From: Mytilus trossulus
Lineage: Eukaryota
Direction of reading: 5' to 3'
Assembly: GCF_036588685.1 (NCBI RefSeq)
Contig: NC_086382.1
Location: 59,520,001-59,584,000 of the forward strand
Length of the DNA stretch: 64,000 bases
Shown piece after piece: positions 3,042 to 47,400 of this stretch. The notes under the pieces were generated by a model, which had not been told where the DNA came from, made no database searches, and saw nothing but the letters and a program-made list of their open reading frames with translations. The position numbers were made by a program, and so were the translations under genes. Each line of letters begins with the position of its first letter. The first letter of the stretch is position 1.

Positions 3042-4160
3042 CAGACCACGGTGATAGTTACGGTGACTGTATCAGGAACCTTGCATATTATATACCTCCA
3101 TCTGGCCAGGGATATTATGTATTATTAGTAATACGACACAAAATGTCTGCACATATCTGGCCCGAGAACACAGTTATTTTACCCTATTTGTCTATTGAAA
3201 CATAATGACAATTAAAAAAAATTCCACCTGCTCTTTCCCAATGAGATTTGGTGTGCATAAAGTTTGACTTTTATCCCGAAACATACCAAAAATCCAGAAA
3301 ACTCTACCAGCTCATTTTCTCCTGGTAACCACAAACACGAGGACATCGGTATGGATGAAGCCAGAGAGCTTCCGAGAAGGGGGAATTCCAGCTTTATTTA
3401 CCTGACCAATTCACTCATTTCTACACAAAATTTAAAAAAGATTTTTTTTCAGACAGTATATTTGAAGTCTTATCTTTCACCTAAATGCAAACAAATAGTG
3501 AAAAATTCCAAAAAAAAGACAAAGAAAAAAAATTAAGAAAAGAAAACACTGAAATTAAAGGGAACTATATTCCTGGACAACGAAAATTGAGGGTAGATAA
3601 CTGTGTCCTTGGGCCATCTTCAAAGCGTGTAATAAAGGAACAGTGCGTTCACTGTTTTTTCTCCCGTCGAATGATCAGTTATGCGCTGAATTTCCTACCC
3701 TCAGATTAGTGAATATTTTTTAATATGTAACTAAAACTACAACTGCATTAAAACACGCCTTTCGACAATTTAGAGATTTCATAAGGGGTAAAGAAATCTT
3801 AATATTTTGTCATATAAATTAACATGAATGTATTAAATGTGAAATAAACATTTCAAGTATCCTGATAACTGGTTAGTTAACTTGCCAGAATATATTGCAA
3901 ATCATTAGCGTTTGGATGGAATTACAACATGTAAATATTTTGGTATACACACTGGGAAAATATATTAAGTAGTACACATAAAAGATCCGACAAGAACAAA
4001 TCAGCCAGAAAGGTCAAAGTTGACAGCAAACACCACAAGCACAGATCATTTCTCTGTGGCTTTCACAAAAAAAAGATACATTTATAGTTATAGTAACAGA
4101 AGATAAGGAATATGATTTTGGTCTACCAAAAAAAATTCACATACACACTGGAATAATCTC

Positions 4161-6436
4161 TTTTTTTTTTTTTTTTTTTTAATAAAATAATGTCTTTATT
4201 GCACTTTTCTTTGCTGTTGTAACAAATTACTCGACCTACAGCAGTTGGCCGAGTATCCCTGTGAATTAGTCACTGGATAACCAGGGAATTTATTCAGTGA
4301 ATTCATATATAAGATCATAGCTTGTTAGTTTTACAGTTCATGGTTATTACATACATTTTACAAACTATATTGTTTCATGATTACGGAAAGTGTACAGTTT
4401 TGTCCGGTTTTGTTTCAAAAGATTAAAACTTTATGATCGTTGACCTTAACCTTATTGATGAAAACCGTTGAAGCTGGTTGATCAATTGTCCGGATTAATT
4501 TATATGTTTTATTGATACACACGAACAACCTCAACTTTAGTTAAAAATTACATGTGGTAAGTGTCGACATTGTGGTTGGAAATTCATTTGATTAAGTGAT
4601 AAAGTGTGTGTAAAAGTATTTTGAGACAAAATTCTGTACATTTTCACAAAGCATGCTGTTTTGGTTTATTACCACGTGCTCAGCTCATATATTGTCAACT
4701 TTTGCTACACAAATTCTATACATGAAAAAAAATATTATATCTAGCTATTCATGATCATATGTATCTTTTTACATCATTTAAAAATTTGCTGTTTTTAGCA
4801 TTAATATATATGTTAATTTCGTATGTTTTTAAAAATTCATTTCTGAAAACTGCATAAGCGTCTATGTCTTTTTGTTTATAATTTGATATATGAGTGCTTT
4901 TATGAATTGAATATAATAAGACAGTTAGGAAGAGATTTATATCATTATACATAGGATCATGTATTTTATAGCCAAGTACTAAAGTTTTAAAATTAAAAAT
5001 ATGTGACCCAATTTTGATTTTGCTTACAAGTACATATATTTTCTTCCAAAATTCATGAAAGAATTGACATTTGAGAAAAAAGTGTTCGTAATCTTCAGTC
5101 ACGTTACACAAGTCACACATACTTGTTTCTTGTATGTGCCATTGTAGTAATAATTGTTTACATGGTAGGATGAAATGGAGTAATTTCCATCTTAACATTT
5201 TATATTTGTTATTAATTAAATAGGTAAAAGTAAATTGAAGCACATTATTTATTGGAGTGATTGATTCTAGATGAAAGATATTTTTCCATTTGGAGAACCC
5301 TAGTGGTCTCTCCTCATTTTTGTTATTTAAATAGTTATATATATCTTTGGATGACATATTTTCAATTAGTTCTGGTTTTTTTTTAACAGTCAAGGACAAG
5401 TTTAATTTTGTTTTTACAGAAGTTTTCAAAGATTTGTCAGATTTTAATGTACTAACCCATTCTTTTGGAATGCAATTTTTCAATTTTAAAAGTTCTGAGA
5501 TCCAATTGGTTTTTGAGGTTAGTTTCTCCAATATAAGTTTTTGTGATATGTGCCCTTTTTGGTCAATTATATCATTAATGAAAATAATACCATCTTTTAT
5601 CCAATTTGGATAAACTAAACATTTTCCTTTAAATTTTATATTTTTATTACCCCACAATATTTGCTGCCTAATATTTCTAAAATTTATGATAGGCATATTA
5701 CTTGTTGGTGTATTATATGCTTCATACCAGCTCTTTAATATGTTCAAGTAAAATGAAGGTAGAACATTACTTAAATTAGGTAATGATTTTATGTTGTCAG
5801 GCATCATATGAAATATAAGGTTGTTTTTACCAAATTTATTGAAATAATATGTTGGAATAACTTTCCAATTAGCAAATTCTTTTGCCGTTAATCGTTTAAC
5901 CCATGAAATATTTCGTGCATTTAAGAAGCAATCAATGTCGGTCATTTTTAGACCTCCATTTGTGTAATCTTTGGTAAGTGTTGAGCGTTTTACCTTTTCT
6001 TGTTTATTATTCCATATAAAATTATAAATAAGTTTTTTAAAATCTTTTATGTACATTTGGGGTATTGAAACAACCGAAGCTAAAAAAGTAAGATTAGGTA
6101 AAATAAGCGACTTAACAACTGTTATTCGTCCTATCATGGTTAAATTTCTTTTTTCCCAATCAAGTCTTAATTTTTTTGTCTGTTTCATTGTTTTTTCAAT
6201 ATTTAATTTGTCACATTCACTTTTATCTAATCCGAAGTAAACACCTAGACTTTTAATTGGTTCTTTGCTCCAGTGTATATTTTCAATTTTTTCTTTACAA
6301 TGTTTAAGTCTACCTAACCATATACCTTCTGTTTTAGATTTATTCAGTTTCAAACCAGAAAGTGTTCCAAATATTTCTATTAGGTTTAGTGCTTGGTGTA
6401 TTTCATTTTTTGAACTGAGAAAGAGTGTTGTGTCAT
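4161..6436 (-). mobile_element. 5'-truncated non-LTR retrotransposon (L1/Tx1 clade)
   Basis: A 13 bp TSD CTGGAATAATCTC lies at 4148-4160 and 6437-6449. Poly(A) tail is T20 at 4161-4180, with AATAAA at 4195-4200 on the minus strand. ORF2 C-terminus is present. Confidence 0.93.
4755..6436 (-). CDS. Partial ORF2: reverse transcriptase C-terminus and zf-RVT of the LINE
   Basis: Starts at (A)DDTT, followed by SGLKLNKSKT, LGVYF, NLTMIGRITVVKSL, FIW, GGLKM and CDLC..EDYEHFFLKC. No stops over ~560 aa. The first 13 aa of the ORF-track entry come from flanking DNA. Confidence 0.88.
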
Positions 6437-7046
6437 CTGGAATAATCTCAGCCAAAGCAAAGAAAGTGTACCACAGCATTTATTTATCTCATATGAGAAG
6501 TGAGATTTTCATCCTTCTTATGGTCTTTTGTTCATGCCATAAGTTTGGCATAATCGAAAAGTTAAAAATTGACTCCACTCAAACACAATACACATGAATA
6601 TAAGTTTTACCTGAAATTTCAGATATAAAGTGTCAAATTTGTTTGCTGATGAACATGCATTCCTATTTCAAGAAATCTGTCAAACATCATGAACACCAAA
6701 CAATCATTCGATACAACTTATACAGCTGACCTATTGTTTACGTTATCCTAGAAACAGAAATAACATGAAAACTTAAAATTGACTAATGAAACATGAAAAC
6801 AAGGTCAAGGTCAAATAAACCTTGTCAGAAAGACATGTTCATCTACCAATCATTGCATAAACCAACTATAGTTAACCTATTGATACTATCATTAAATAAA
6901 TATACATCAAGAACAGGATTGATGCTTCCACATTTCTTATGTGCCTGTCCTAAGTCAAGGCCTGTAGTTAAGTGGTTTTCGTTGTTTCATGCCTGTCATA
7001 CTTGTTTTCCATAAATTGTTCATAATTTATAACAATACAGCTATAA

Positions 7047-7772
7047 AGGAGTAGGTTCAGTAAGACCCTCTTGCCACCCTGAGATGTGGTGTGAGTGCCA
7101 ATGAGACAACTCTCCATCCAAATAACAATTTAAAAATTAAACCATTATAGGTTAAAGTACGGCCTTCAACACGGAGCCTTGGCTCACACCGAACAACAAG
7201 CTATAAAGGGCCCCAAAATTACTAGTGTAAAACCATTCAAACGGGAAAACCAACGGTCTAATCTATATAAACAAAACGAGAAACGAGAAACACGTATATA
7301 TTACATAAACAAACGACAACTACTGTACATCAGATTCCTGACTTAGGACACATATATCGGTTATAAGCATCAAGTCATGCTAAATTACTGAAATCTTCAT
7401 TATTTTAGCATTTCATTAAATTTTAGACGGTTTCTGTCTTAAATGAAATTGGCCACATTTGTGTTCATTCATAGTATTGAAATGTAAGTTGTATTTGATG
7501 ATAAAACATAACATATATAAAAATTGAGGATGAACAGGGATGTGGCTACTTTCATTTTTGACAAAAACCATCTGAAAAGTGACGTTTTTTTTTGCAAATT
7601 TTATAGATTTTTCATATTAAAGCTTGAATTGGAACATTTTTAATGACTAAATCAGTTAAAATCTTTAAAATAAACTAATTGAATCAATTGAAATAGACAC
7701 TCAAGTGTTTAAAAAGTGTCCAAAATCGTTTCTTAGATGAGGTCTAAAACAGCCCTTACCGGAACTACTCCT
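7047..7772. mobile_element. MITE shared by both duplicate copies (partner 31482-32056)
   Basis: Termini AGGAGTAGGTTCAGTAAG...CTTACCGGAACTACTCCT. In this copy ~7070-7350 is replaced by another dispersed repeat. Confidence 0.6.
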
Positions 7773-8206
7773 TAGGCAATTGGTTTTGTCAGTTGAATTG
7801 TGTTTGGTGAATAGCTGACTCATTGGCAATTGCACCACATCTCCTTATTTATATATGGATCAATTTTTTGATAAAACAAAATAAAATAATGTTTTGAGTA
7901 GGACACAGCTTTGTATCTTTAAATTTTACAACAAACAGACATATTCCTTTTTATATTCCCCCTGAATTTGTTTATCATCAATTTTAATAGAATCATTCAA
8001 AAGGTTGAAATATGGAAACATGAAAATATCATAATACCAAATGAATAATTACAAAGAAAACATTTGAAGTTTAGCAACTTTTTATTTCCATTATAAAATG
8101 CCTCTTCTTTGATAGCACTTAGATAAAGAATTCAATAAAAATTTAATAGTACAGATCATTCATTTAATACAGGTTTTTAATTGACAGAGAACAAAGAAAA
8201 TAAATG

Positions 8207-11200
8207 CTATCTTTTCCTCGTGCGTTTGCTTTTATTTTCACTGTCTGATGTTGATGAAAGAGATAATGCTTTTCTTTTGTTCCTATCTGAACCTGATGGT
8301 CTGAAAGTAAAAAAAAAGACAAGTTTTTAAAAACTACAAACATGAATAAATATATAAATACTAGAACACACCCGCCATGAGACCAAGTACATAACTATGT
8401 GTAAGCCTTATTTTAGCCTGGATTTTAAGTATAGATATTGTCATCTGATAAAGTCATGCTGATTATAAGATGCAGTTCTACATTCAAAATCTTTTTGTTT
8501 GAACCCGTCACCCTGGAACTTGTAAATTATTGGTAATATTAATTATTTGGAAAACAAAAGGTCCTGGAATGGAGTATGTTTTATCAACAGCATTGTCCTA
8601 TATTAGTCATAAATAAAGTTGAATACTGTACCTATATGCCTTATTCGAAGTCATGTATTTTAGTATTCATATTGTCATCTTATAAAGTCATGCTGATTAA
8701 AATATTACAATAGGAAACAATGTGACAATGATTGAATTTAGTAGTGTCAACCCTGTGATTATGTCTCGTGTATAAAGCAAATCCTAAATACACCCTTTGG
8801 TGGTGCACTTGTCAGATGTGGAACGTACAGATAAGGTAATAGTTGGTAAATATACTATTGGTATCGGTATCAGTTTCGATCCGGAACTTGTTAATTATTG
8901 GCAATATAAATGATTTGAAAACAAAAGGGTCCGCAGGGGAGTTTTTTTAATCTACACCATTGTCCTATATTAGCTATATATAAAGTTGAATTCTTTGATT
9001 TGTCGTTTTTACCCCATGACAGCTGACAAATTGGACCTCGTTATTTTAGAATTATTGATATAAAAATTTGACAACAACTAGAACCAGCAGATGATGAAAC
9101 CTGCATTGAATGTAATATTTCCAACTATTTATAAATCAACGTGCAGCAATTAAAATTAATAGCCTTGTGCTGATGCTGCATTAAAACAACATTTAAAGGA
9201 AGATGAAAATTATATATTTTTTTAAGGTAATACAATTTCTGATTTTGTTCTCTTTGAAAAATAAGCAATCAGGAAATAAAAAGTGTGTGTAGCTTTTCTC
9301 ATAAATTTTCTTTGTGATGAGGGCTGTATCCTATAGTCATTAATTAATCCAGAATATGTCCCTAGTACATGGATGCCGTATCCGCACTATCATTTTCTAT
9401 GTTCAGCGGACTGTGAAAATGAGGTAAAACCTCTCATTTGGCATTACAATTAAAAAGATCATATCATAAGGAACATGTATACTAAGTTTCAAGATGATTG
9501 GACTTCAACTACATAAAAAATTACCTCGACCAAAAACTTTAACCTGAAGTGGGACAGACAAATGGACGAATGAATGAACAAACAGAAGCACAGACCAGTT
9601 AACATAATGCCCATAAATGGGGCATAAAAACAAATATAATAATTTATAATGTAACTTCTACTAATATGTAACCACAGTGGAATACTTACACAGAAACAAA
9701 ACCTGATATATCTGGTGGACAGTAATCTAGTGGGTTGGGCGGAGGATTGTCTGTGAGATGAGCTGCTATAAATTCTGGCTTCAGACATAGTATATTATTA
9801 CCCAATAGAACCTGTATGTCAGACTGAAGCAACAAAATACAAATCATACGATTAACGTCTTTACATCAATTTATTTTGCTGTCGTAAAAAAACAACAATT
9901 GAATGACAACTACACAAACATACTGTAGATTTTTTTTGTGGGTACCAATTTTAGGGAATGTGGATTACAGAAAAAAAATGGATTTTGATTGAAATTCGAT
10001 TTTTTGCTTTTACCAAAATGTGCATAAATCTACAGAAAAAATATTCTTAGTTCAACATTTGAATTTATTGTTCGACCATGATATCAATGAAAATTGGTAT
10101 CCATTAAATAATGATGAACACAAGCTGCAATTCTAAAAATATTGTTTCAAATGAACTCTTTAATATACTTACAGGTTGTAAAGGCTTTTTGCTGAGGTCA
10201 AGGAATGCATGTGAAGCAGATATATTTTCTTCATATGGGGGTCTATAAAAGTGAAATACAATTGTTTTATCATTACAAATGAAATGCAAACTATTTCTAC
10301 ATAACTAAAAATGTTCATTGTTGATTTCTGCGGAAATCATTTTTTCATTTTTGCGGATAACAAAGATGTACTTTCAATAATAAAGAGTTGTGTCATTTAA
10401 AGGACAACATTGCAAATAATAGAAAAGGGAAGACAAATACCAATGGTAAAATTGAACTTGCAAACCAGTTTTGAACTTCATTTAAATTAATACCAAAGTA
10501 AAAACCCACAAAGTTAATTCATTAATATTTGAAATTGGTTCAGACTTGATATATATATTATCATAACTATGATCCAATAAATCATAATGGACTCTTTAGT
10601 TGGTATCTGTTTTTTCTAATCGCTGAAAAGGATTATTAACATTTGTAATGTAATGTAATGTTTCTCATGACATGTGTGTTAGGCATGAGGAAATATATTC
10701 TTAGTTATGATATTTTTACACTTTATTTAAAACACTTACTTATTTGGTAAAACAGTAGCACCTCCAGCCTCTAGCAATCTTTTAAAATTGTCATCTTTAA
10801 CCTTATCACAATTTAGTAGCACTGTCCAACCATCAAATGCACCTATACATTGGTTAGTCGACTGTCGAAAATAAAACAGAGCTCATTATCATAATGCATA
10901 TTAATTTATTTCTGTGGTAACTAATCTTGTAGATTGAGGAAAAATTGTATATCTTAGATTTAAAAAAAAACCTAATCTCAACTCTGCTTCACAACAAATA
11001 CACAGTGTAGATTATAATAACATGTTGTCATTTATTTTTGTGGTTTCTAATCTTGTGGATTGAGGGACAATTGTATATTTGGTGGTGTTTTTTTTTTACC
11101 TTGGTAGATTGTTGAGATGAACAAAAGCTTTAACTCATTTCATATCTGCATCACAACACATACACAGTGCAAATTATGATAACATGTTGTCAAGTATAAA

Positions 11201-14028
11201 CCAAACAGTATCAACAGAGTCAGTCTTCAGTGCAATAATAATTAATTGCTGCTCTTCTAAGACTGCATATCTACCACAATATACACATAACTATCTTGTA
11301 AAAGTTATTCACAAGTTATTAAGATAAAACCAAAATGTCACTATTTTATATTTCATACAATTTACATCTTTTCTGTGAAACATCTTCAAATTTACTAAAA
11401 TGTTCAAGTCATCACTCATCCCAATTAAAAAAAAACAGAATGTAAATAAAATCTTACCAAGAACAATTTCATTATATTTTAAAGAATTCAATTGAATATA
11501 AAATACCACTCCCACCTGTAGCGTATTTTGGACTTTGATCCTCCACCTGTATGCAGCAGCTGCCAGTTTAGCTGTTTGTTGATTGAGCAAACTTTGTGTT
11601 CCATCACCTCCCCATTCATAAAAATCTTCCTACAAGTACAATTATTACTGTACATATAGCACTTATAGAATTTGTTGTTCTTGATTAATATGACATATCA
11701 ACTACAAATAAACAGTACATTTTACCCTCACACATCAATCCTCCAGTTAAACTTGCATCAAGGATGAATAAACCAGAAATAAATTACTTATTAAATGCAA
11801 AAATATAAAATAAAAAGTTTTAAAGCATGGTAATACATTTTTTTTTTACCGAAAGTAAAATGTAATCACAAATATAAGTTTGTTCATTCATAGTAATCAA
11901 TATAAACATATTTGAAGGATTGCTGGTGTTTATCCTTTGGAGCAATTTAGGTGTCCCAAACATAATTCCTTTTATAAATATATAAAAAATATCATTCTTT
12001 GAATATCTTTTTGAGAAGCCAATATTTAAATTTCTTATTATATCTATTTATGTAACATGAAATGACCTTATTGAGGCTTTTCATAAGTCTTTCATTACCT
12101 GAACAAATTGTCTCTCCTGACGACAAGCTTCAAAGTAAGATTTGTGTAGAACCCATTTCCCTGATGCTACACTTGCTAGAAACTTCTCATTTCTTGTAGA
12201 CTTACCTAACAAAAATAATGCTTGTCTAAAAATGTTCATTGTCTCTATAAAATTAGTTCATTAACGCTCTTTATTTTAAAATTACATCAACTTTCAGAAA
12301 ATGCCAAGATACAGAAATTTCAAATTCACTGTGTCTATCCTAAATTGGTTGACATATTATTTTTGTTTTTTTGTTTGTATATTGTTCTTGTCTACTACAC
12401 AACAATATGTATCTCTGAAATGTTTGATGTGTTACATGATACAGATAGATATAAGATTGTATAGAATTCTTCCATGGAAATTGTTAGCTCCCATCATTTT
12501 CTAGATTGAAAGCAGGACTTTCATACACATGTATCATTTTTTCAGATTCCATTTTTTACACTAGAATTGAATGATGAAATTGTGAACACACATATAAAAG
12601 TAGTCCTGTTTTATTATACAATCTACATGTAAGTACTGCACACAAACCTATGACTAGATGTGTACATGAACAATCAAAGTGTAGAGATTCTAATATATTT
12701 CCTCCAAGCTGTTCTACTAAAGCACCATAATTTTCTTTTTCCTAGAATATAAATAATAAATGTAAGGTATGTTATGGTTATATCAAGGTATGTAATGATA
12801 TAAATAATAATCGATTCATATATTTCGTAGGCATCTATTTTCAGAGATTGGGAAAACTTGTGTGTCAATCTCTGCATACAATGTCTATAGAAAGTTTTAA
12901 TTCTTTGAACATTTGAATTTGTGATTCACCTGTAACCACAAAGTGCATGCAAATTGGTATCCAACAAATAATAACAATCCACATTAGTAAAATATATCAT
13001 AATACCAAGATTAATGGTAGGCACTGAAATGCAGGATCTCTAATAAATCATTTAAATTTGTTTTAAATACTAAGGTATTAAATGAGCAATACTTGAATGT
13101 TAGGAAGGAAACATAGATATTAATAGTTTTAATTCTAGTGCTCATATTACAAAATTGTTTGTGAACTTAATTTGTGATATGCCTCCATCAAGAAAATTTC
13201 ATGAAAATATATAAAATCCACAAAAAACAAAATATTGACAGGACTTGTAAAGTAATCTCTTACAGCTTGTTCCATGCCAGGCATAATGAACACAGGGGGT
13301 GATTTCTGGACTGTCAAAACTTTCATCGATAGGTTCTGGAGAGGGAATTCTATTCTCTTCCTTTCTTACCTTGTGGAATGCTAAAACAAACAACATATTC
13401 AGTGTCTCTAATTAGTCAACACTAACTTTTATATGAAAGGTAAGAAATAACATTAATACTAAGTATTTTAACAGTCAAATGTGAATTTTTACTGTGTACT
13501 TCCTTTGGCTCAATATGCATTTGATGATTTATGTATTCACTCACTATTTCAAGTTTAAAATTTCTTCTGAATAGATTTTTAATAATCTTTCTTGTACACT
13601 AATAACACTTGCTCTGTCTAATATTTGATATCTAAGTAAAGTATTGTTTGTTCTATTAGTGCATAAAAAGTGTGTTTTTTTTAATGTTCTACGATAATAC
13701 TATTGCTTTTTTTTCTATATTAGATGAATTTTAATATGTTTGGTAACAATTTGTTTAAAGTTAACAGATATTTATTTCTTTTAACTTTTTATAAAATATT
13801 TAAAGGGTGTATGGTAAAATGCCTGTACCTAGTGAGGAATCTGACATTGTTATTCATTAGTTTGATTTGTTTGAGCTGTTGATTTTGCCATGTGATTAGG
13901 GCTTTCCATTTAAAATTTTCTTTGATGTTTTGTATCTTTGTTATTGGACTTTCATATGCATGTCAATATGAATACCTACCTAGAGATGGACCCTCCGGAG
14001 TTGGAACTCTTTCATTTTTTGGTTTTTC
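8207..14028 (-). pseudogene. TOPBP1: Duplicated TOPBP1 3' end (nine exons, BRCT7/8), copy A; partial pseudogene or alternative 3' module
   Basis: Exons 13980-14028, 13264-13380, 12648-12741, 12099-12205, 11516-11629, 10740-10861, 10173-10242, 9690-9823, 8207-8300 are colinear with copy B and keep GT-AG sites. Exon 13264-13380 is 117 nt versus 110 nt in B (+7 frameshift). The other exons are open. No upstream TOPBP1 exons are attached. Confidence 0.88.
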
Positions 14029-17000: not shown

Positions 17001-17689
17001 TATTTCATTTATAGAGATGTGTCTATTTACTGTGACAATAGTTCTTATAATATGACTTGTACAAATATCATTAAAAAATATTTTATTCATTTAAACTGTT
17101 TTTAACTTCAAATGATTAAAGAAAAAAAACCAATGATTGCATCTCAATTTAACTGCACTGACACTTTTAACTATGACGATCACTTTGCGTTCGTCCGTGG
17201 TGTGATCAATTAATGAACACTTATAAGAAATATTGTCTGGAACGAATTTTAACCATTAATTCGGTACAGACATGATGTATAACAAATTGTCTTCAGATTG
17301 TCCGTTAATTAATTTGGAACCTATAAAAAGTAAAGGGTTTAAACTCCATCAGGCAAATTTGATCTCAGTTGGATCTGGTGAATATTTTATGTCCTATTTT
17401 GTAATATAGATCTTCAACTGTTTCAGTCCTTGTATATCCTTAGCTTTCAAATATTCAGCTTTGTGCGTTCCCAGTGAAAGTAAACCCACAGAAACGTTTC
17501 GGAATCGTAACATTTATAACGTGTTTTTTTTTAAAACAAAGTTCAGACTAAATTATCCTGTAATAATTGAGTTTCTGCTATTGTTTATCAAAAGAACAAG
17601 TCATCTTGCAATATAGTAACCAATAAATTGCTATTGTCTGTTGGAATGTCCCTCAAAGTAAAAAAAAAGTTTCAAATCCTTAGAATGGA

Positions 17690-17935
17690 AGATTGATTGA
17701 TTGGTTATAAAGACCACTTTCAACACCATTGTGCTATTTCGCAGAAGTTTTATATGGATTGAGGAAGTCATAGTGCCCGTTGAACAATGTTGAAAAACCA
17801 CAAATATTTGGTAGGAAAACTGACAATCCTAGCCAATTAAGATTGAAGTCGAGGGCACAGCCCCGTGCAGGATTCGAACTCACAACCTATAGTGATGACA
17901 TGCTAGTGATGCAGTAGTTCGACCACTTTACATTA
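17690..17935 (-). mobile_element. tRNA-derived SINE, degenerate
   Basis: B-box-like GTGAGTTCGAATCCTGC on the minus strand (~17867-17883) and a (CAAT)n tail at ~17690-17703. Confidence 0.55.
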
Positions 17936-20783: not shown

Positions 20784-20814
<31 letters not shown>

Positions 20815-32464: not shown

Positions 32465-32470
32465 TTTATT
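32465..32470 (-). terminator. Candidate TOPBP1 polyadenylation signal AATAAA
   Basis: First AATAAA ~120 nt after the stop codon; conserved in copy A at 8081-8086. Confidence 0.4.
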
Positions 32471-32590
32471 TCCATTATAAAATGCTTCTTCTTTGATAGC
32501 ACTTAGATAAAGAATTCAATAAAAATTTAATAGTACAGATCATTCATTAAATACAGGTTTTTAATTTACAGAGAACAATGAAACTAAATG

Positions 32591-38500: not shown

Positions 38501-41500
38501 AATATAAAATAGATGAGCTGCTATAAATTCTGGCTTCAGACAAAGTATATTGTTACCCAATAGAACCTGTATGTCAGACTGAAAATATAAAATAGATGAG
38601 CTGCTATAAATTCTGGCTTCAGACAAAGTATATTGTTACCCAAAAGAACCTGTATGTCAGACTAAAAAAACAAAATACAAATCATATGACTAACGTCTAT
38701 ACATCGATTTATAACCAAGATCAAGCATGATCATCAGTTCAGCACATAAATAACTTATATCAGATAATTATGGGTTCTTTGTTACTTTGAATGTCATGAC
38801 TTCATACATGAAGATCATAGTAATTTAGGTAATACTTGCCTAAAAGAAACACTATTTTAGTCACTGAAATCAGTGGATTCTAATGAAAATAAAATATATG
38901 GCCAGAAACGACAATGAATGACAAACTACACAAATATACTGTGGATTTTGTTTGATATTTCTTTTGTGCTTTCGCCAAAATGTGCTTACATCTACAGAAA
39001 ATGTATACTTTGTTCAACATTTAAATTTATAGTTTTACCATGTATTTAATAAAAATTTGGTACCCATTGAATAATGATGAATCCAAACTGCAATTCAAAA
39101 AATATAGCTTCAACTCCATGATATACTTACAGGTTGTAAAGGCTTTTTGCTGAGGTCAAGGAATGCATGTGAAGCAGATATATTTTCTTCATATGGGGGT
39201 CTACAAAAGTAACATAAAATTGTTTAATCGTTACAAATGAAACGCATACCATTTGTACGAATTCTGTGGATAAAAAATCCTATTACTTTAAATTCTAAAA
39301 AATTGTATTATTTGAAGAACACCATTGTTTAAAATAGAAAATGGGGAAAGACAAATACCAGTAGGAATATGGAAACTATTAAATCAACCATTCAAGGTTT
39401 TCCAGAGTCTTTATGGTGACTTGAATAAGACCGGTACCACTCAGATTACATTTCTACCTTGACAGGTAAGTTTGTATTTAACCTATAAAATACTTATTTA
39501 GCCTTGAGAATTGAAAGGTCAGTTTATCCCATTCATAGAAGTTTACCTATGAGGGTCAGAATGGGGTTTACAGAATAGAGAATACATGTAATAGCAACAA
39601 AAAAATAGAGAAAAGAGAAAATGAACAATAAAATAAAATATAGAGAATACTGCGGTACAAAAGTATAAATAATAAATGTGCAAAATAACTTGAAAAGGTA
39701 ACTTTAGTAACTGTAATGCAATACTGATAATATAATGATCAATGTACATAATTGATAAATAATCTTGTAAAAGAAACACTATATATATTTTGTATATAAA
39801 AACATTTTACAGAATGAGAGTTATTAGCTCACCAGGCCCAAAGGGCCAAGGGAGCTTTTCCCTTCACTTGGCGTCCGTCGTCGTCGTTAGCTTTTACAAA
39901 AATCTTCTCCTCTGAAACTACTGGGCCAAATTAAACCAAACTTGGCCACAATCATCATTGGGGTATCTAGTTTAAAAAATATGTGGCGTGACCCGGTCAA
40001 CCAACCAAGATGGCCGCCACGGCTAAAAATGGAACATAGGGGTAAAATGCAGTTTTTGGCTTATAACTCAAAAACCAAAGCATTTAGAGCAAATCTGACA
40101 AAGAGTATAATTGTTAATCAGGTCAAGATCTATCTGCCCTGAAATTTTCAGATGAATCGGACAACCCTTTGTTGGGTTGCTGCCCCTGAATTGGTAATTT
40201 TAAGGAAATTTTGCTGTTTTTGGTTATTATTTTGAACATTATTATAGATAGAGATAAACTGTAAACAGCAATAATGTTCAGCAAAGTAAGATTTACAAAT
40301 AAGTCAACATGACCGAAATCGTCAGTTGACCCTTTTAGGAGTTATTGCCCTTTATAGTCAATTTTTAACAATTTTTCGTAAATCTTAGTTATCTTTTACA
40401 AAAATCTTCTCCTCTGAAACTACTGGGACAAATTAATCCAAACTTGGCCACAATCATCTTTGGGGTATCTAGTTTTAAAAATGTGTGGCGTGACCCGTTC
40501 AACCAACCAAGATGGCCATGGGCTAAAAATAGAACATAGGGGTAAAATGCAGTTTTTGGCTTATAACTCAGAAACCAAAGCATTTAGAGCAAATCTGACA
40601 TGGGGTTAAATTGTTTAGCAGATCAATATCTATCTGCCCTACAATTTTCAGATGAATCTGACAACCCGTTGTTGGGTTGCTGCCCGTGAATAGGTAATTT
40701 TAAGGAAATTTTGCTGTTTTTGGTTATTATCTTGAATATTATAATAGATAAAGATAAACTGTAAACAGCAATAATGTTCAGCAAAGTAAGATTTACAATT
40801 AAGTCAACATGACCGAAATGGTAAATTGACCCCCTAAGGAGTTATTTTCCTTTATAGTCAATTTTTAACAATTTTCATAAAATTTGTAAATTTTTATTAA
40901 CATTTCCACTGATACTACTAGGCCAATTCATTATAGATAGAGATAATTGTACTTTAACAATATCACAATAACAATAAAGTGACCTTAATTTTGGACAAGG
41001 TAAATGGCATGAAGCCAAATTTATCAACTTCTATTGTATGAAAGGGAAACTGACCTTTCAATTCTCAAGGCTAAATAAGTATTTCATAGGCTAAATACAA
41101 ACTTACCTGTCAATGTAGAATTGTAATCTGAGTGATACCGGTCTTATTCAAGTCACCATAACACTATTTATTGATTCAGATTTGAAATACATTATCACAA
41201 TTATGATCAGATAAATCAAAATAGACTCTTTAGTTTGGATCTGTATTTTCTAATCATTGAAAAAGGTTTTTAACTTTTGTAATATGTTCTTATAATATAC
41301 ATGTGAGGCATGAGGAAACATATTCTTAATCACAAAACTTTGAAACACTTACTTATTTTGTAGTACAGTAGCACCTCCAGCCTCTAGCAATCTTTTAAAA
41401 TTGTCATCTTTAACCTTATCACAATTCAGTAGCACTGTCCAACCATCAAATGCACCTATACATTGGTTAGTTGACTGTAAAAAATAAAACAAAGCTCACT

Positions 41501-44498
41501 ATCATAATGCATATTAATTTATTTCTGTGGTAACTAATCTTGTAGATTGAGGAAAAATTGTATATCTTAGATTTAAAAAAAAACTTATCTCAACTCTGCT
41601 TCACAACAAATACACAGTGTATATTATAATAACATGTTGTCATTTATTTTTGTGGTTTCTAATCTTGTGGATTGAGGGACAATTGTATATATGGTGGTGT
41701 TGTTTTTTACCTTGGTAGATTGTTGAGATGAACAAAAGCTTTAACTCATCTCATATCTGCATCACAACACATACACAGTGCAAATTATGATAACATGTTG
41801 TCAAGTATAAACCAAACAGTATCAACAGAGTCAGTCTTCAGTGAAAGAATAATTAATTGCTGCTCTTCTAAGACTGCATATCTACCACAATATACACATA
41901 ACTATTTTGTAAAAGTTATTCACAAGTTATTAAGATAAAACCAAAATGTCACTATTTTATATTTCATACAATTTACATCTTTTCTGTGAAACATCTTCAA
42001 ACTTACTAAAATGTTCAAGTCATCACTCATCCCAATTAAAAAAAAACCAGAATGTAAAATAAATCTTACCAAGAACAATTTCATTATATTTTAAAGAATT
42101 CAATTGAATATAAAATACCACTCCCACCTGTAGCGTATTTTGGACTTTGATCCTCCACCTGTATGCAGCAGCTGCCAGTTTAGCTGTTTGTTGATTGAGC
42201 AAACTTTGTGTTCCATCACCTCCCCATTCATAAAAATCTTCCTACAAATAGTGTTATTACTGTACATATAGCACTTATAGAAACTGTTGTTATTATTTAA
42301 CTACAAAATATCGTTCATTTTACTCTCTCACATTTTACCAATCATCCAGTTAAACTTACATAAAGGATGAATAAAACAGTAATAAATAACTAATTACATG
42401 CAAAGATATAAAAAAAAAAAGGTTAATAAAAGTTATGTTTTTTATTTCAAGTCCTATATAAAGCATGACAATACAAAAGAAAACAACTTTACTTGAAAGT
42501 CACATATATAAACACAAGTTCAAGTTTGTACATCATACTTAATGTATAGAAATTGTAATAGACATAAAAATATTAGAAGGATTGTTTTTTTTTATTCTTT
42601 GAAGTAATTTAGGTGTACCAAACATTATTTTTCTTTATCAGTAGTTAAAGATATATTCTCCTTTGTAAGTCTTTTAGAGAAGCCATTATCTAAATTTCTA
42701 ATTATAACTATTTATGTAACATAAAATGACCTTATTGAGGCTGTTCATTAAACTGTCATTACCTGAACAAATTGTCTCTCCTGACGACAAGCTTCAAAGT
42801 ATGATTTGTGTAGAACCCATTTCCCTGATGCTACACTTGCTAAAAACTTCTCATTTCTTGTAGGTTTACCTGAAAGTCATTGAACTTGTGTAAAAATATG
42901 TACTGCCTCTAAAAAGTTATAAAATTAGTACATCAATGCTTTTTATTTTATAATTCACAACCTTCAGTAAATGCCAGATACAGACATTTGAAATTTACTG
43001 AGTCTATCCTAAACTGTTTGACATATTTCTTTTGTTTCTTGTTTGTTTACTTTCTGCTTACTTGTCTTTAAAACTACAACAATGATTATCTCCAGAATGT
43101 TTGATGTTTCAGATAGATTTAAGATCGTACAAAATCCTTGATGGTGATTTTTTTTTATTGTTAGCCTCAGTCATTTTGGAAGCAGGAGTTTCATGTGTCA
43201 ATTTTCTCAGCTTCTATCTTTTATAATAGATTTGTATAATGTTATTGGGACACACAGATAAGAGTAATCCTGTTTTATTACACTATCTACATGTAAACAC
43301 TGCACACAAACCTATGACTAGATGTGTACAGGAACAATCAAAGTGTAGAGATTCTAATATCTTCCCTCCAAGCTGTTCTACTAAAGCACCATAATTATCT
43401 TTTTCCTAGAATATAAATAATAAATGTAAGGTCTGTTATGGTTATATCAAGGTATGTAATGATATAAATAATAATTGATTCCTATATTTTTGTAGGCACC
43501 TATTTTCAGAGATTTTGAAAACTTGCTTGTTTGTCAATCTCTGCATACAATGTCTATAGAAAGTTTTTAATTCTTTGAGTGTTAGGAAAAGAAACATAGA
43601 CATTAATAGTTTTACTTCTTGTGGTCACATTACAAAAATGTTTGTGAACTTAATTTGTGATATGCCTCCATCAAGATAATTTCATGAAAATATATAAAAT
43701 CCACAAAACACAAAATATTGACAGGATTTATAAAGTAATGTCTTACAGCTGGTTCCATGCCAGACATAATGAACACAGGGGGTGGTTTCTGGACTGGTTC
43801 CTCTTCAGGTTCTGGAGAGGGAATTCTATTCTCTTCTTTTCTTGACTTGTGGAATGCTATAACAAACAACATTTTCAATGTCTCTAATTAGTCAACGCTA
43901 AATTTTATATGAAAGGTAAGAAATAACATTAAAACTAAGTATGTTAATAGTCAAATGTGAATTTTTACTGTGTTCTTCCTTTGGCTCAATATGCATTTGA
44001 TGATTTATGTATTCACTCATTATTTCAAGTTTAAAGTCTCTTCTGAATAGATTTTTAATAATCTTTCTTGTACACCAATAACACTTGCTTTGTCCAATAT
44101 TTGATTTCTAAGTTAAATTCTGTTTGTTCTTTTAATGCATGAAAAAGTGTGTTTCTTTTTAATGTTCTATGGTAATACTATTGCTTTTTTTTCTATATTA
44201 GATAAATTTTGATATTTTTTGTAACAATTTATTTATAAAGTTAACAGATATTCATTTCTTTTAACTTTTTATAATGGGTGTATGGGAAAGTGCCTTTATT
44301 AAGTCAGGAATATGACATTGTTATCTATTACTTTGATGGGTTGAGCTTTTGATTTTGCAATTTGCTTAGTGCTTTCTGTTTAAATTTTTCCATGATGTTT
44401 TATATTTTTAATATTGTACTTTTATATACATGTAAATATAAATACCTACCTAGAGATGGACCCTCCGGAGTTGGAACTCTTTCCTCTTTTGGTTTTTC
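32591..44498 (-). CDS. TOPBP1: TOPBP1 last nine exons (BRCT7/BRCT8 and basic NLS-like tail), functional copy B
   Basis: Open frame from [18 protein letters not shown] through [46 protein letters not shown] and ASHAF to [13 protein letters not shown]. Confidence 0.93.
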
Positions 44499-47400
44499 CT
44501 TTAATATTGTCAAATAAAAAAAGAAAATATAATCACACTGTACTCGTGTAATGCTAGCAATTTATCATATTATAACAAAATAAATGTTTCAGTTGTTACT
44601 CTGTACTGTTGAGATATGGATGATTTTTTTGTTTTTCTGTTTTCATGTTTTACTTTTTACATTTTATCTTTTAAATTGGATCTTACATCTTCCTTAATTA
44701 ATGCGTATAAATTCCCAAAAATCATCAGAATGACAAACAGGATGCATGTGTAATTATGCTAAGCATATCCGTCTAATTTTGTAAGTGTCTGTTATCGTAA
44801 AGTAACTACTATAAATTTGAAAAGCTGATACACTTTACAAAGCATCACTGTTGAGCTTCTGAACAAATATGAAGTCAATCTGTCGTGTAGATTTTGAGTA
44901 AAGTGGGTCAAAAATATTTGTTAAATAAACAGGTGGAGGTGATTGCAATTTAGCCAACTTTTAAAGTGGGAGTATAATATTTAATTCAGCCAAAATAAAG
45001 TTTAAAATTATTTGTACATTTTGTACATGAGACAAATTTTCCTTTTTGTTATCACATAGTTGTATGGTGTATGAGAAATTGTGTACTTCCTATCCTTGGG
45101 TCATGTATCAAAGTTATTGAAACATTTTGCTTGCTCCATATTTAAGGATAGCAACATACACAGCAACTCTGAATCACTCTGAAATGGAAAAATAAAATCC
45201 TATACTTACTTGAGGAACTTCAGCTTCAGGTTCGTGTAACCCTTCCTCATAATCTATGTCTTCTTCCTCCTCAGAGAACTCCCCGTCCAGGAACTCAGCT
45301 ACATCCTGGGTAGGGCTACACGCTCGTTCAAGTTTGTGAGCTAACTTTTCTTGTTCTAGTCTGTAAAGCATTTACCAGAGGCATTGATATAAACGGGAGG
45401 AAAGGGAGATTTTTTTACGTTATAATACATTAACTTGTAGTGGATTATTGTCTATTTCTTATTATGTATGTATAAAAAAAATGATTTTTTAAATTTGAAA
45501 TGCCTTCTTACTCCTTATTGCTATACCTTCAGAAAAGTCTAAATCTGTATTGCAGAAAAAAATATCATCAATTAAGATAATTCTAACTATATCTGAACAC
45601 TAAATTATCTTTGACAGATTTAAATATTATTAGAGAGTATATTCATCAAAATATATTCACTTCTGATTCGTAACAATAAAGTGTTGGTTTTTAAAAAAAA
45701 GTTTTATTATGCAAAACCTCAGAAACTAAGAAGTATGTAACTCCCCCACGAGAAGAACCAGTAAAGAAATACTATAAGAACAAAGTCTCCCATTTGTTGA
45801 TGGGGAATATAAAAAGTAAACATGGAAGCTTATTAGTTATAATTCTAAAAAATTTGTAAGGGTTCCGCGGAACCCAGTGTCTCGCCTACTTTTGCTGTAA
45901 ATCGCAGGTTCAACAAAAATGAGGCAAAAAATCAATAAAAATATTCCTCTTGATACTATCCTATGATTGTAAGAAGGTTCTGTCCAAGTTTGGTAAAAAT
46001 CTAGGACAGTTAATGAATCTAATAAATGTGTTGAAAACTTTAACTACAGACTGTATGTAATGTTAACTAGAAGAAAATCTAAGTCAATTTAAAAGTAAAA
46101 TACAGAAAAAATGGAGTTATACAAAATTTACTAACTTATGATCATAAATAAGCTTCTGTCCAAGTTTGGTACAAACCCAGGATAGTTTAAGAAAGTTATT
46201 CAAATTTTAAAAACTTTTACCACAGAGTGAATGTAATGTTTCCCTGCAGAAAAACTAAGTTCATTTAAAGGTAAAATACGGAATAAATGGATTTATTATT
46301 TTATAAATTTTGCCTCTGGATACTATCTTATGATCATAAACAAGTGTCTGTCCAAGTTTGGTACAAACCAAGGATAGTTTAAGAAAGTTATTCAAATTCT
46401 AAAAACTTTAACCACAGAGTGAATGTAATATTTCCCCACAGAAAAAAATAAGTCCATTTAAAAGTAAAATACGGAAAAAATGGAATTTTATTTTTACAAA
46501 GTTTACTTCTGGATACTATCTTATGATCATAAACAAGCTTCTGTTCAAGTTTGGTAGAAATCCAGTATAGTTTAAGAAAGTTATTAAAATTTCAAAAACT
46601 TTAACCACAGAGTGAATATTTGTGGACGCCGCCGCCGCCGACGGAATGTAGGATCGCTTAGTCTCGCTTTTTCGACTAAAGTCGAAGGCTCGACAAAAAG
46701 GTTTTAATCAGATGATATAAAATACATCTTACCTTCCAGTATGATCATCCCATGTGACCTGCACACTCTGTGAAGGCTCCGGTCCTGAGTGATTTTCTAA
46801 CGCTTTCCCTGTTAAATATATATACAAATTTTCATTACTGGATAATAATTTTAAGAAAGGATAATTTAAAATCCAACTGAAAATGTGATGCATTATAGTA
46901 GATTTTGCAAAAAACAAAACTTTAGTATTAAAAGACAGATGGGCAGAAAATATGTCTTCCTATGGAAATGAGGGAATTTAACTATAACAATAAAAATCTT
47001 ACAGCAGACTTAAAATCTTTTTCTTTTTTTATATATATATATAATTGATTCAAACCTGAGCTTGTTGGAGTCTTCTTTTCAACTTTATCGTCTACAATAA
47101 GATCAAATGATTTAAATTTTAAATCACATTTCAATATCAAACATCAGAATAAATTTTAACAGACTTTTCATTATGACACCTTTATATCAACTGAAATGTG
47201 TAACCTCATTGAACAAGTTGACATCATTTTGTAAAAATTCATAGATATGTCAAATGTTGATATTCATCTTTTTATTTCTGCATGTTTAATTTAAAGTGGT
47301 CTTGTAAGGAGCATGAATTGCTAATCAATACATTCAGGTAAGCTAGTTTCATCCAAATCAAGATGTCAAGGAATATTATGATAATAATATGAAAATTAAT

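What the first reader, a model, noticed from the sequence alone, without database searches (positions are those of the whole stretch)
3098..44600. Helicase-RBR cassette (~15 kb) sandwiched between two direct copies of the TOPBP1 3' end
Seen: the order is neighbour promoter - X(A) - 15 kb insert (~14080-29408) - X(B) - rest of TOPBP1, where X is the last nine exons plus downstream DNA. Inference: this is what single-crossover integration of a circle, or template-switching repair, would leave. Recombination between A and B downstream of the frameshifted exon would remove the helicase gene while leaving a full-length TOPBP1. That is a concrete route to the gene presence/absence variation known in mussels.
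Basis: partly seen in the sequence, partly recalled or inferred. Interest (0 to 1): 0.8.

Follow-up and report, generated by a model that had tools for sequence, protein, structure and literature searches.

The report
Tandem duplication: helicase plus TOPBP1 tail
In this mussel chromosome a block holding a helicase-ubiquitin-ligase gene and the tail of the neighbouring DNA-repair gene TOPBP1 was copied in tandem long ago, and a giant transposon later split the first copy; this explains the 'sandwich' without any foreign insertion and is an ordinary kind of rearrangement.

Summary
A (3100-14063) and B (29408-44533) are collinear direct repeats, 4.6-22% diverged. They flank 15.3 kb holding an intact 1741-codon DEAH11/12-type helicase-RBR ORF. 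Both carry TOPBP1 BRCT7/8 exons; I find eight coding exons, not nine. A's first exon has a +7-nt frameshift.

The cassette-insertion reading does not hold. A helicase paralog (hel2; 85% aa, dS 0.30) lies 62 kb upstream. Its downstream DNA is homologous to hel1's up to the base where B starts. In copy 1 that continuous sequence is split by a 35.9-kb foldback-like transposon with terminal inverted repeats and a 5-bp target-site duplication. Sixteen such inverted pairs exist in the genome. Window 1-3099 is this element's arm, not a neighbour promoter. The ancestral state was therefore [hel2-X(A)][hel1-X(B)-rest of TOPBP1]: one tandem duplication of at least 27.7 kb with one novel junction, 14063|14064.

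That junction is bridged by a contig from a run under another organism label. The duplication predates the split from the M. edulis lineage.

Deletion by A/B recombination remains possible. A half-dose hint in one run is not decisive.

First-stage notes report other foldback elements in this genome, none this duplication.

The parts
1..3099 (.). Right arm and terminus of a 35.9-kb foldback-like TIR transposon. The element runs from 32,788 bp left of the window to 3099.
   Evidence: An inverted copy of 432-3099 lies just downstream of hel2 at 82-95% identity. Terminal inverted repeats were read at base level. The terminal 542 bp occurs as 16 inverted pairs 11-45 kb apart in the genome.
3100..3104 (.). 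Right copy of the 5-bp target-site duplication (ATCTG). The left copy lies directly before the element's left terminus, outside the window.
   Evidence: 5-bp duplications are also seen in 3 of 5 other copies.
3100..14063 (-). X(A): orphan copy of the TOPBP1 3' end (exons E1-E8 plus downstream DNA).
4127..6562 (-). LINE-type retroelement fragment present only in A (ORF 4758-6479).
   Evidence: Gap in the A/B chain. Pfam zf-RVT 7.6e-8 and RVT_1 4.1e-4.
8210..8299 (-). E8(A): in-frame core of the last coding exon, followed by the same TAG stop as in B.
9692..9823 (-). E7(A): end of BRCT8. It differs from B at 6 sites, all synonymous.
10173..10241 (-). E6(A): identical to B in the coding core.
10739..10840 (-). 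E5(A): start of BRCT8.
11516..11629 (-). E4(A): identical to B.
12099..12203 (-). E3(A).
12646..12738 (-). E2(A): start of BRCT7.
13264..13380 (-). E1(A), with 7 extra nt at about 13311-13323 that shift the frame. An ATG at 13326, downstream of the shift, is in frame with E2. The 7 nt are absent from the A-type contig of run X3.
   Evidence: read-laying table 4 shows 2+2+3 nt left out at 13318-13328 in X3 only.
14063..14064 (.). The one novel junction of the tandem duplication: the end of unit 1 (equivalent to B 44533, inside a TOPBP1 intron) is joined to the start of unit 2.
   Evidence: Sharp loss of A/B homology. Bridged by X2 record 12, a 753-nt contig lying on 13423-14176.
14064..14532 (.). 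Interspersed/tandem repeat whose end coincides with the junction.
   Evidence: Multi-copy at 83-91%. In 4 of 4 other copies fetched, homology starts at 14054-14061.
16073..16763 (.). Highly abundant interspersed repeat.
   Evidence: Word depths of 10^4-10^5.
16785..18036 (+). Region upstream of hel1 that is homologous to the region upstream of hel2. It is the leftmost detectable part of duplication unit 2.
   Evidence: substitution divergence 0.19-0.23.
18701..19695 (.). ~1-kb element with inverted ends, inserted upstream of hel1.
   Evidence: copies at 85-89%.
22019..22770 (.). Young ~750-bp MITE with ~225-bp inverted arms.
   Evidence: many copies at 95-96%.
22927..28831 (+). Core hel1/hel2 homology block (86.5% nt). 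It includes the hel1 ORF 23246-28471.
23246..28471 (+). hel1: a single-ORF DEAH11/12-type RNA helicase-RBR E3 ligase gene. Motif positions in the ORF: GETGSGKS at aa 324, DEAH 421, SAT 453, QRKGRAGR 620; RING1 at about 1546; RING2 GCNHVTC at 1700. The start codon and any 5' exon are unresolved.
28472..29412 (+). DNA downstream of hel1, homologous to DNA downstream of hel2 up to the transposon insertion point.
   Evidence: divergence 0.15.
29409..29413 (.). Empty target site (ATCTT) in unit 2. It corresponds to the ATCTG duplicated around the transposon in unit 1.
29408..44533 (-). X(B): the 3' end of TOPBP1 that is contiguous with the rest of the gene. In-frame exon cores: E8 32594-32683, E7 36621-36752, E6 39131-39199, E5 41352-41453, E4 42128-42241, E3 42763-42867, E2 43310-43402. 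E1 is at about 43747-43856.
30208..30707 (.). Common ~500-bp interspersed repeat present only in B.
36684..38677 (.). 83-bp x 24 minisatellite in B that repeats the E7 acceptor and exon start. A has a single copy at 9756-9839.
44534..62746 (-). Rest of TOPBP1 (upstream exons), for example 45177-45371, 49147-49596, 51591-51836 (BRCT), 55276-55845 and 56083-56364 (BRCT).
   Evidence: ORF pieces. Pfam BRCT 1.6e-5 and PTCB-BRCT 4.3e-8.

Best explanation
The sandwich is the product of one old tandem segmental duplication, not of a cassette insertion.

Starting state (inferred): a DEAH11/12-type helicase-RBR gene on the + strand and TOPBP1 on the - strand were convergent neighbours. In unit 2 their stop codons are 4.1 kb apart.

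The duplication (inferred): a block of at least 27.7 kb was duplicated head to tail. In present-day unit 2 it runs from 16785 or further left to 44533. It includes the helicase with its upstream region, the intergenic DNA and the last eight coding exons of TOPBP1 (BRCT7/8 plus the C-terminal tail). Its right breakpoint lies in a TOPBP1 intron. The result was [hel2-X(A)] | [hel1-X(B)-rest of TOPBP1], with one novel junction at 14063|14064.

What followed:
- TOPBP1 stayed intact through X(B). X(A) became an orphan 3' fragment. Both helicases stayed under purifying selection.
- A 35.9-kb foldback-like TIR transposon inserted between hel2 and X(A), duplicating 5 bp. It pushed hel2 out of the window and created the apparent left edge of the A/B repeat.
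- A LINE landed in A. A repeat and satellites expanded in B. Several transposable elements landed upstream of hel1.
- Parts of A and B were homogenised by exchange (inferred from the mosaic of divergence).

Shown: the homology, the junctions, the target-site duplication, the transposon family and the relative timing. Inferred: the order of events, the mechanism of the duplication (non-homologous or replication-based, since no shared repeat was found at the unit's ends) and the exchange between A and B.
For: 1. hel2 lies 62 kb upstream on the same strand and hel3 80 kb upstream. The hel1/hel2 homology runs 22927-28831 at 86.5%. Weaker homology continues upstream (16785-18036) and downstream (29126-29412).
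2. The hel2-side homology ends at 29412 and the A-side homology starts at 29408. The overlap is the target site. In unit 1 the same sequence is interrupted by an element with terminal inverted repeats, flanked by ATCTG on both sides.
3. The element is a real transposon family. 32 of the 40 scored matches to its terminal 542 bp form 16 inverted pairs at 92-100% identity, 11-45 kb apart. 5-bp target-site duplications are seen in 4 of 6 copies examined.
4. Divergence at the left end of A/B (0.15-0.20) equals that of the helicase flanks (0.15-0.20) and is near helicase pS (0.25).
5. In the tree hel2 groups with the M. edulis protein P0002 (support 100/99) to the exclusion of hel1. Amino-acid identities are 93% (hel2 to P0002) against 85% (hel1 to P0002).
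6. Contigs of A type and of insert type occur in runs under a second organism label (X2, X3). X2 record 12 bridges 14063|14064, with 641 nt on one side and 113 nt on the other.
7. The family forms local clusters in other bivalves: several proteins on one contig in Mercenaria, Saccostrea, Ostrea and Patella.
Against: 1. Divergence is uneven. X averages 0.096, with tracts of 0.046-0.08, against 0.15-0.25 for the helicase part. A single event therefore needs later A/B exchange or constraint.
2. The 5' edge of the unit was not found. 14064-16784 has no counterpart upstream of hel2, only short repeat-type matches.
3. The junction coincides within 10 bp with the end of an interspersed repeat. A transposon-linked break, or a later insertion at the junction, cannot be excluded.
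4. No long molecule spanning A-insert-B was seen. All four runs laid were short contigs.
Confidence: 0.8

Rival explanations
1. A discrete ~15-kb helicase cassette, foreign to this spot, entered the TOPBP1 3' end. It came either by single-crossover integration of a circle carrying X, or by template-switch repair, and this left X on both sides.
For: The X-insert-X order is real. The 14063 breakpoint is sharp and shows no flanking homology. The insert is rich in mobile repeats.
Against: The helicase is not foreign to the locus. Once the transposon is removed, hel2 sits directly upstream of X(A) with the same downstream DNA as hel1 before X(B). The left 'edge' of X is a transposon target site, not a recombination edge. 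The family is native and clustered in bivalves. The event predates a species split. A locus-derived circle re-integrating would give the same product as a tandem duplication and cannot be told apart from it.
Confidence: 0.07
2. Two separate events: an older duplication of the helicase alone, and a younger, independent duplication of X that happened to land next to hel2.
For: X is on average less diverged (0.096) than helicase synonymous sites (pS 0.25) and helicase flanks (0.15-0.20).
Against: Independent events would leave a second novel junction between the DNA downstream of the helicase and X in one of the units. None exists: homology runs through that point in both units and is interrupted only by a transposon with a target-site duplication. 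The left 1-3 kb of X is as diverged (0.15-0.20) as the helicase flanks.
Confidence: 0.08
3. Assembly artefact: two haplotypes of one locus were joined in tandem.
For: Mussel genomes are highly heterozygous, and hemizygosity is widespread (abstracts and passages of PMC7653742 and PMC10514466). In X1, A and the insert have about half the depth of contigs carrying B letters.
Against: dS of 0.30 between hel1 and hel2, with hel2 closer to an M. edulis protein than to hel1, fits paralogs and not alleles. The two units differ by many transposon and satellite insertions. An independent run's contig bridges the junction. A-specific and insert-specific contigs have equal depth in X1 (16-17 against 17-19).
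Confidence: 0.03

Closest known systems
Tandem segmental duplications that copy one whole gene plus a fragment of its neighbour (partial-gene duplicates, as described in many animal genomes; recalled general knowledge)
   Same: Two head-to-tail units and one novel junction. One complete extra gene (the helicase) and one truncated copy (the 3' end of TOPBP1). Decay by transposon insertions after the duplication. Patchy homogenisation between the copies.
   Different: The 5' edge of the unit is not recoverable. One unit is split by a 36-kb transposon. The truncated copy keeps a strong signature of purifying selection (pN/pS 0.07).
DEAH11/DEAH12-type RNA helicase-RBR proteins (Pfam KH_DEAH11 and RBD_DEAH11; sources name them 'ATP-dependent RNA helicase DEAH12, chloroplastic-like')
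   Same: Same domain order: DEAH helicase core, OB fold, RRM-like RBD, KH, RING1-IBR-RING2. Hundreds of full-length relatives in molluscs, crustaceans, corals and a brachiopod.
   Different: hel1 is a lineage-specific paralog. No protein more than 88% identical to it appears among the 120 best database hits. It lacks the in-exon ATG that hel2 has.
Foldback-type DNA transposons (long, internally repetitive inverted arms; recalled from Drosophila FB and Galileo)
   Same: Multi-kb inverted arms built largely of tandem repeats, short terminal inverted sequence, target-site duplication, many copies.
   Different: Very large (about 30-45 kb in most pairs). 5-bp duplication. No ORF of 110 aa or more with ordinary composition in this copy. 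Superfamily and transposase are unknown.
Non-allelic homologous recombination between low-copy repeats as a source of copy-number and presence/absence variation
   Same: Direct repeats of 11-15 kb flank a gene. A deletion product would keep TOPBP1 whole.
   Different: The repeats are 5-22% diverged, which is poor substrate for recombination. No deletion allele was observed; there is only a depth hint in one run.

Membership tests
TOPBP1 (3' end: BRCT7/8 plus tail) | Sequence match of the exons to TOPBP1 BRCT7/8 rather than to other BRCT proteins | tested here: met
   E2 and E7 of B each hit only TOPBP1 chains in the PDB (5 of 5 hits; E 3e-4 and 7e-4). They cover chain residues 17-47 and 199-234 of the BRCT7/8 construct. 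E5 hits Pfam BRCT_TopB1_SLF1 at 2.2e-5, below the curated cut-off because it is a single exon.
TOPBP1 (whole gene) | Full array of BRCT domains upstream, contiguous with X(B) | tested here: inconclusive
   Only two upstream exons were tested, and both hit BRCT/PTCB-BRCT. No full-length reference protein was obtained. The gene probably runs beyond the window.
DEAH11/12-type helicase-RBR | DEAH helicase core with motifs I, II, III and VI | tested here: met
   Pfam DEAD 1e-9 and Helicase_C 4.7e-15. The motifs are located.
DEAH11/12-type helicase-RBR | Family-specific KH and RNA-binding domains | tested here: met
   KH_DEAH11 1.4e-19 (70 bits against a cut-off of 27). RBD_DEAH11 1.4e-7 (32 bits against 28.4).
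DEAH11/12-type helicase-RBR | C-terminal RBR module (RING1-IBR-RING2 with a cysteine-bearing RING2) | tested here: met
   IBR 4.8e-16 (2 stretches) and IBR_1 4.4e-9. Cysteine motifs are in the ORF. Enzymatic activity is not testable here.
Tandem segmental duplication | Two units in the same orientation, adjacent, with homology running through the helicase/X boundary in both | tested here: met
   The only interruption is a transposon with a target-site duplication.
Tandem segmental duplication | A single novel junction (end of the unit joined to its start) | tested here: met
   14063|14064. It is present in an independent run.
Tandem segmental duplication | A start of the unit identifiable in both copies | tested here: inconclusive
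   Homology is detectable only from 16785. 14064-16784 has no partner upstream of hel2.
   The helicase and its flanks are duplicated too, and hel2 was contiguous with X(A).
TIR DNA transposon of foldback type | Terminal inverted repeats, target-site duplication and multiple copies | tested here: met
   There are 16 inverted pairs, and a 5-bp duplication is seen in 4 of 6 copies.
TIR DNA transposon of foldback type | An encoded transposase (autonomous element) | tested here: not met
   All 30 ORFs of 110 aa or more have skewed, satellite-like composition: the four commonest residues make up 43-69%. No family search was run on them.
Gene presence/absence variation | The gene is present in some individuals or haplotypes and absent in others | tested here: inconclusive
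   All 5 mussel-labelled DNA runs listed hold at least 0.54 of hel1's words, but the tool lists holders only. In X1, A and the insert have depth 16-19 against 24-36 for contigs carrying B letters.

The most novel reading that the evidence does not exclude
The orphan TOPBP1 tail X(A) is not a dead relic, and the A/B repeats still interact.

Evidence that A's exons are constrained:
- E2-E8 of A differ from B at 16 synonymous but only 4 non-synonymous sites (pN/pS 0.07). The probability is 6e-5 under a model in which A drifts neutrally.
- The splice sites and the stop codon are kept.
- The +7-nt frameshift in E1 is absent from the A-type contig of one run, X3.
- In the window's allele an ATG downstream of the shift is in frame with E2.

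A may therefore encode a stand-alone BRCT7/8 protein, or serve as an alternative 3' module. This matters because B's own E7 acceptor is repeated 24 times.

Exchange between A and B could also produce haplotypes without hel1, as the half-dose in run X1 hints. That would be one traceable route to mussel presence/absence variation.
Probability: 0.25. Interest if true: 0.6.

Novelty: new member of a known kind. Interest (0 to 1): 0.33.

Why it matters
It replaces an attractive but wrong reading, a foreign helicase cassette captured between repeats, with a documented history. Two convergent neighbour genes were copied together, and a giant transposon disguised the structure.

For mussel genomics it is a worked example of how lineage-specific gene families grow by tandem duplication. 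The literature already suspects this process behind dispensable genes (passage in PMC10514466). The example also shows how such duplications create direct repeats that could later delete a gene copy without harming the essential neighbour.

It flags two things worth following:
- A truncated TOPBP1 BRCT7/8 copy that still looks constrained.
- A family of about 36-kb coding-free foldback-like transposons with 5-bp target-site duplications.

Tried and rejected
1. Full-length TOPBP1 reference. The one exhaustive protein search, with the 190-aa exon 55276-55845, returned only two fragments of 99 and 116 aa. Exons were therefore assigned through Pfam and PDB one by one.

2. A third, older X relic between hel3 and hel2. 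The match of about -44.4 to -43.4 kb to B 30203-30707 is rejected, because that stretch is a common ~500-bp repeat with thousands of candidates.

3. The 5' edge of the unit at 14539-14626, matched to -43308. Rejected: the same short motif matches many places on both strands.

4. Origin of the duplication by recombination between repeats at the unit's two ends. No repeat is shared between 14064-14532, the DNA right of 44533 and the DNA upstream of hel2.

5. Giant element as a Maverick/Polinton. No ordinary ORF of 110 aa or more, so this is not supported. I ran no protein-family search on its short ORFs.

6. Hemizygosity from depth. In X1, 10 of 10 listed variant letters are B letters, on contigs of depth 24-36 against 16-19 for A and insert. 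The result is suggestive only.

7. Expression. X5, which is labelled RNA only by a guess, holds 0.59 of hel1's words. It has zero or near-zero depth on A's exons E1-E3 and on 16801-17800. This gives no support for transcription of A and no location for a hel1 5' exon.

8. Literature. The search 'DEAH12, RBR, helicase, invertebrate' (listing and abstract starts only) gave no paper on this family's function in molluscs among the 12 listed. One clam study mentions DEAH12 35 times; I saw the listing only. For PMC7653742 and PMC10514466 I read search passages; 'helicase' occurs 0 times in either main text. Supplements are closed, so I could not see whether these helicase genes or this locus are in their lists of dispensable genes.

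Full report
**Where this is**

The window is G000:C10:59,520,001-59,584,000 of a 1.30-Gb, 541-contig assembly. Contig C1 has the same length (113,486,924) as the contig recorded for a Mytilus trossulus protein (seen). The genome is therefore probably M. trossulus. This is an inference from one number only.

**1. The observation**

A self-BLAST shows a collinear chain of direct-repeat blocks between A (3099/3100-14063) and B (29408-44533).
- The right ends are sharp. The two copies read alike up to 14063/44533 and then differ completely.
- Substitution-only divergence is 0.096 over 6,987 aligned nt, but it is a mosaic:
  - 0.15-0.20 at the left end (3620-6668);
  - 0.046-0.08 in the middle (6689-9839);
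  - 0.14-0.22 at 9979-10456;
  - 0.095 from 10534 to 14063.
- The size difference comes from insertions. A has a LINE fragment (zf-RVT and RVT_1). B has a common 500-bp repeat, an 83-bp x 24 minisatellite and other tandem repeats.
- A 3.5-kb part of A has no third long copy in the genome.

The 15,344 bp between the repeats hold one 1741-codon ORF (23246-28471, +). Pfam finds DEAD, Helicase_C, OB_NTP_bind, RBD_DEAH11, KH_DEAH11 and IBR. The rest of the insert is largely interspersed repeats.

On the minus strand I find eight coding exons in each copy.
- Searched exon by exon, E2 and E7 hit only human TOPBP1 BRCT7/8 chains (5 of 5 PDB hits each).
- E5 hits BRCT_TopB1_SLF1.
- A's E1 carries 7 extra nt, which shift the frame. 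E2-E8 keep their splice sites, their frame and the same TAG stop.

The sandwich is therefore real. I count eight exons, not nine.

**2. What the surroundings show**

The helicase DNA has two paralogs upstream on the same strand of the same chromosome:
- hel2, 62 kb upstream, 88% nt identity;
- hel3, 80 kb upstream, 73% nt identity.

I fetched 70 kb to the left and 30 kb to the right and compared them with the window.
- The hel1/hel2 homology is strongest over 22927-28831 (86.5%).
- It continues upstream (16785-18036; divergence 0.19-0.23).
- It continues downstream (28474-29412; divergence 0.15).

The decisive point is the downstream end. The hel2-side homology stops at 29412 and the A-side homology starts at 29408.
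- Read base by base, unit 2 is continuous across this point and carries the pentamer ATCTT there.
- In unit 1 the same sequence is split. The left half ends in ATCTG and is followed by an element terminus.
- The right half begins, after the inverted terminus at 3095-3099, with ATCTG again.

This is a terminal-inverted-repeat element with a 5-bp target-site duplication. It is 35,888 bp long, and its right arm is window 1-3099.

The element has these properties:
- Its arms are inverted copies: 432-3099 against the DNA just right of hel2, at 82-95% identity.
- Its interior is mostly inverted satellite blocks.
- It has no ordinary ORF of 110 aa or more.
- Its terminal 542 bp occurs as 16 inverted pairs at 92-100% identity, 11-45 kb apart. 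These are 32 of the 40 scored matches. The other 8 matches are at 81-82%: three more pairs and two singles.
- Of five other copies examined, three show clean 5-bp duplications (GCAAT, GTACC, GATTT) and two do not.

The 'neighbour promoter' is therefore a transposon arm. The left edge of the A/B repeat is an insertion site, not a recombination edge.

**3. The history that follows**

With the transposon removed, unit 1 reads hel2, downstream DNA, X(A). Unit 2 reads hel1, downstream DNA, X(B). Homology runs through the helicase/X boundary in both.
- Separate duplications of the helicase and of X would have left a second novel junction there. None exists.
- The only novel junction is 14063|14064. 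There the end of unit 1, inside a TOPBP1 intron, meets the start of unit 2.
- The structure is thus a tandem segmental duplication of at least 27.7 kb (present-day 16785-44533). It copied a whole helicase gene and the last eight coding exons of its convergent neighbour.

Timing:
- hel1 and hel2 are 85% identical in protein. pS is 0.25, dS 0.30 and omega 0.27.
- hel2 is 93% identical to the M. edulis protein P0002, and hel1 only 85%.
- In a maximum-likelihood tree of 15 proteins, hel2 and P0002 are sisters (support 100/99), with hel1 outside. hel3 pairs with an M. galloprovincialis protein.
- The duplication therefore predates that species split. No protein closer than 88% to hel1 is among the 120 best database hits.

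Both helicases have been under purifying selection since the duplication.

**4. Points against this reading, or left open**

- The X part is on average less diverged than the helicase part. I explain this by exchange between A and B, which the mosaic suggests, and by constraint. This is inference.
- The unit's 5' edge is not recoverable. 14064-16784 has no counterpart upstream of hel2.
- The junction coincides within 10 bp with the end of an interspersed repeat, in 4 of 4 other copies examined. A transposon-linked break, or a later insertion exactly there, is possible.
- The sequence cannot tell unequal exchange, replication-based template switching and re-integration of a locus-derived circle apart.

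**5. Independent data**

hel1's words are held by runs under two organism labels:
- X1 (organism A): 0.90;
- X2, X3, X4 and X6 (organism B, one study, four samples): 0.54-0.74;
- X5 (labelled RNA by a guess): 0.59.

I laid X1, X2, X3 and X5 on 12001-18000. All are short Logan contigs.
- X2 record 12, a 753-nt contig, lies on 13423-14176 with 8 other letters and 1 gap. It bridges the junction with 641 and 113 nt. The 113 nt lie in the repeat.
- A-type and insert-type contigs are present in X2 and X3, so the duplication exists under the second label too.
- In X1, A-specific contigs (0 differences) have depth 16.0-17.1 and insert-specific ones 17.2-19.4.
- All 10 listed variant letters in X1 are B letters, on contigs of depth 23.9-35.7.
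- X5 shows no cover of A's exons.

With dS 0.30 and the tree, a false join of two alleles is very unlikely.

**6.

A crossover between A and B to the left of E1 would remove hel1 and leave TOPBP1 with B's E1 and A's intact E2-E8. The logic holds.
- It would remove only one of three local helicase copies.
- The repeats are 5-22% diverged.
- No deletion allele was seen.

Papers on mussel presence/absence variation say its origin is unresolved. They say dispensable genes tend to sit in recently expanded families, probably made by tandem duplication (passages of PMC7653742 and PMC10514466). Their supplements, which might list this locus, were closed.

**7. Comparison with known things**

- The helicase is a clear member of the DEAH11/12-type helicase-RBR family. 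The family is widespread in marine invertebrates and often clustered.
- X is the BRCT7/8 end of TOPBP1.
- The rearrangement is a tandem segmental duplication with a partial-gene copy.
- The interrupting element is a foldback-type TIR transposon. First-stage notes of this scan list several other foldback-like elements in this genome (unchecked leads).

None of these is a new kind of thing.

**8. What remains curious**

- A's E2-E8 differ from B at 16 synonymous and 4 non-synonymous sites (S 157.5, N 547.5; pN/pS 0.07). If A had drifted neutrally, about 65% of the differences should be non-synonymous (P = 6e-5).
- Synonymous divergence (0.10) equals intron divergence, so conversion of exons alone does not explain the deficit.
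- The 7 extra nt in E1 are missing from X3's A-type contig but present in X1 and X2 (table 4).
- In the window's allele an ATG at 13326 is in frame with E2.
- B's own E7 acceptor is repeated 24 times.

Whether A is transcribed is unknown.

**Verdict**

The cassette-insertion interpretation is replaced by an old tandem duplication of helicase plus TOPBP1 tail, later split by a giant transposon. Presence/absence variation by A/B recombination is possible but unshown. Interest is modest.

Noticed in passing
window 1-3099 and 32.8 kb to its left (L012-L015): A 35.9-kb foldback-like transposon. It has multi-kb inverted arms made largely of satellites, a 5-bp target-site duplication and no ordinary ORF. 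There are 16 inverted terminal pairs at 92-100% identity in the genome, most 30-45 kb apart, plus a subfamily at 81-82%.
   Followed up: partly
window 8210-13380 (A exons E1-E8): The orphan TOPBP1 BRCT7/8 exons look constrained: 16 synonymous against 4 non-synonymous differences from B (pN/pS 0.07). The +7-nt frameshift in E1 is absent from run X3's A-type contig. An ATG at 13326 is in frame with E2.
   Followed up: partly
window 36684-38677: In the TOPBP1 copy that is joined to the rest of the gene (B), an 83-bp unit holding the E7 splice acceptor and exon start is repeated 24 times at 97% identity. Copy A has one unit, at 9756-9839.
   Followed up: no
window 12001-18000, run X1: A-specific and insert-specific contigs have depth 16-19. 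Contigs carrying B letters (10 of 10 listed variants) have depth 24-36. This hints that A plus hel1 is at half the dose of B in that sample.
   Followed up: partly
window 3620-14063 vs 29471-44533: Mosaic A/B divergence: blocks at 0.046-0.08 lie next to blocks at 0.14-0.22. This is as expected from past gene conversion or unequal exchange between the copies.
   Followed up: partly
window 23183-23300: hel1 has isoleucine where hel2 and the M. edulis protein have their start methionine. The database model of hel1 (P0001) begins with M followed by GAIIC, which implies an ATG supplied by an unidentified upstream exon.
   Followed up: no
L002, L003 (left of window); also C9 and C1 (L004-L007): There is a local helicase-RBR cluster. 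hel3 (longest ORF 1410 codons, dS about 1.3 to hel1 and hel2) pairs with an M. galloprovincialis protein. Partial paralogs lie on two other chromosomes.
   Followed up: partly
window 22019-22770: A young ~750-bp MITE with ~225-bp inverted arms. Dozens of copies at 95-96% identity suggest recent activity.
   Followed up: no
window 59829-62421: A 48-bp x 54 satellite (96% matches) lies inside the upstream part of TOPBP1.
   Followed up: no
window 14054-14532: The duplication junction coincides within 10 bp with the end of a repeat that forms short tandem arrays elsewhere in the genome.
   Followed up: partly
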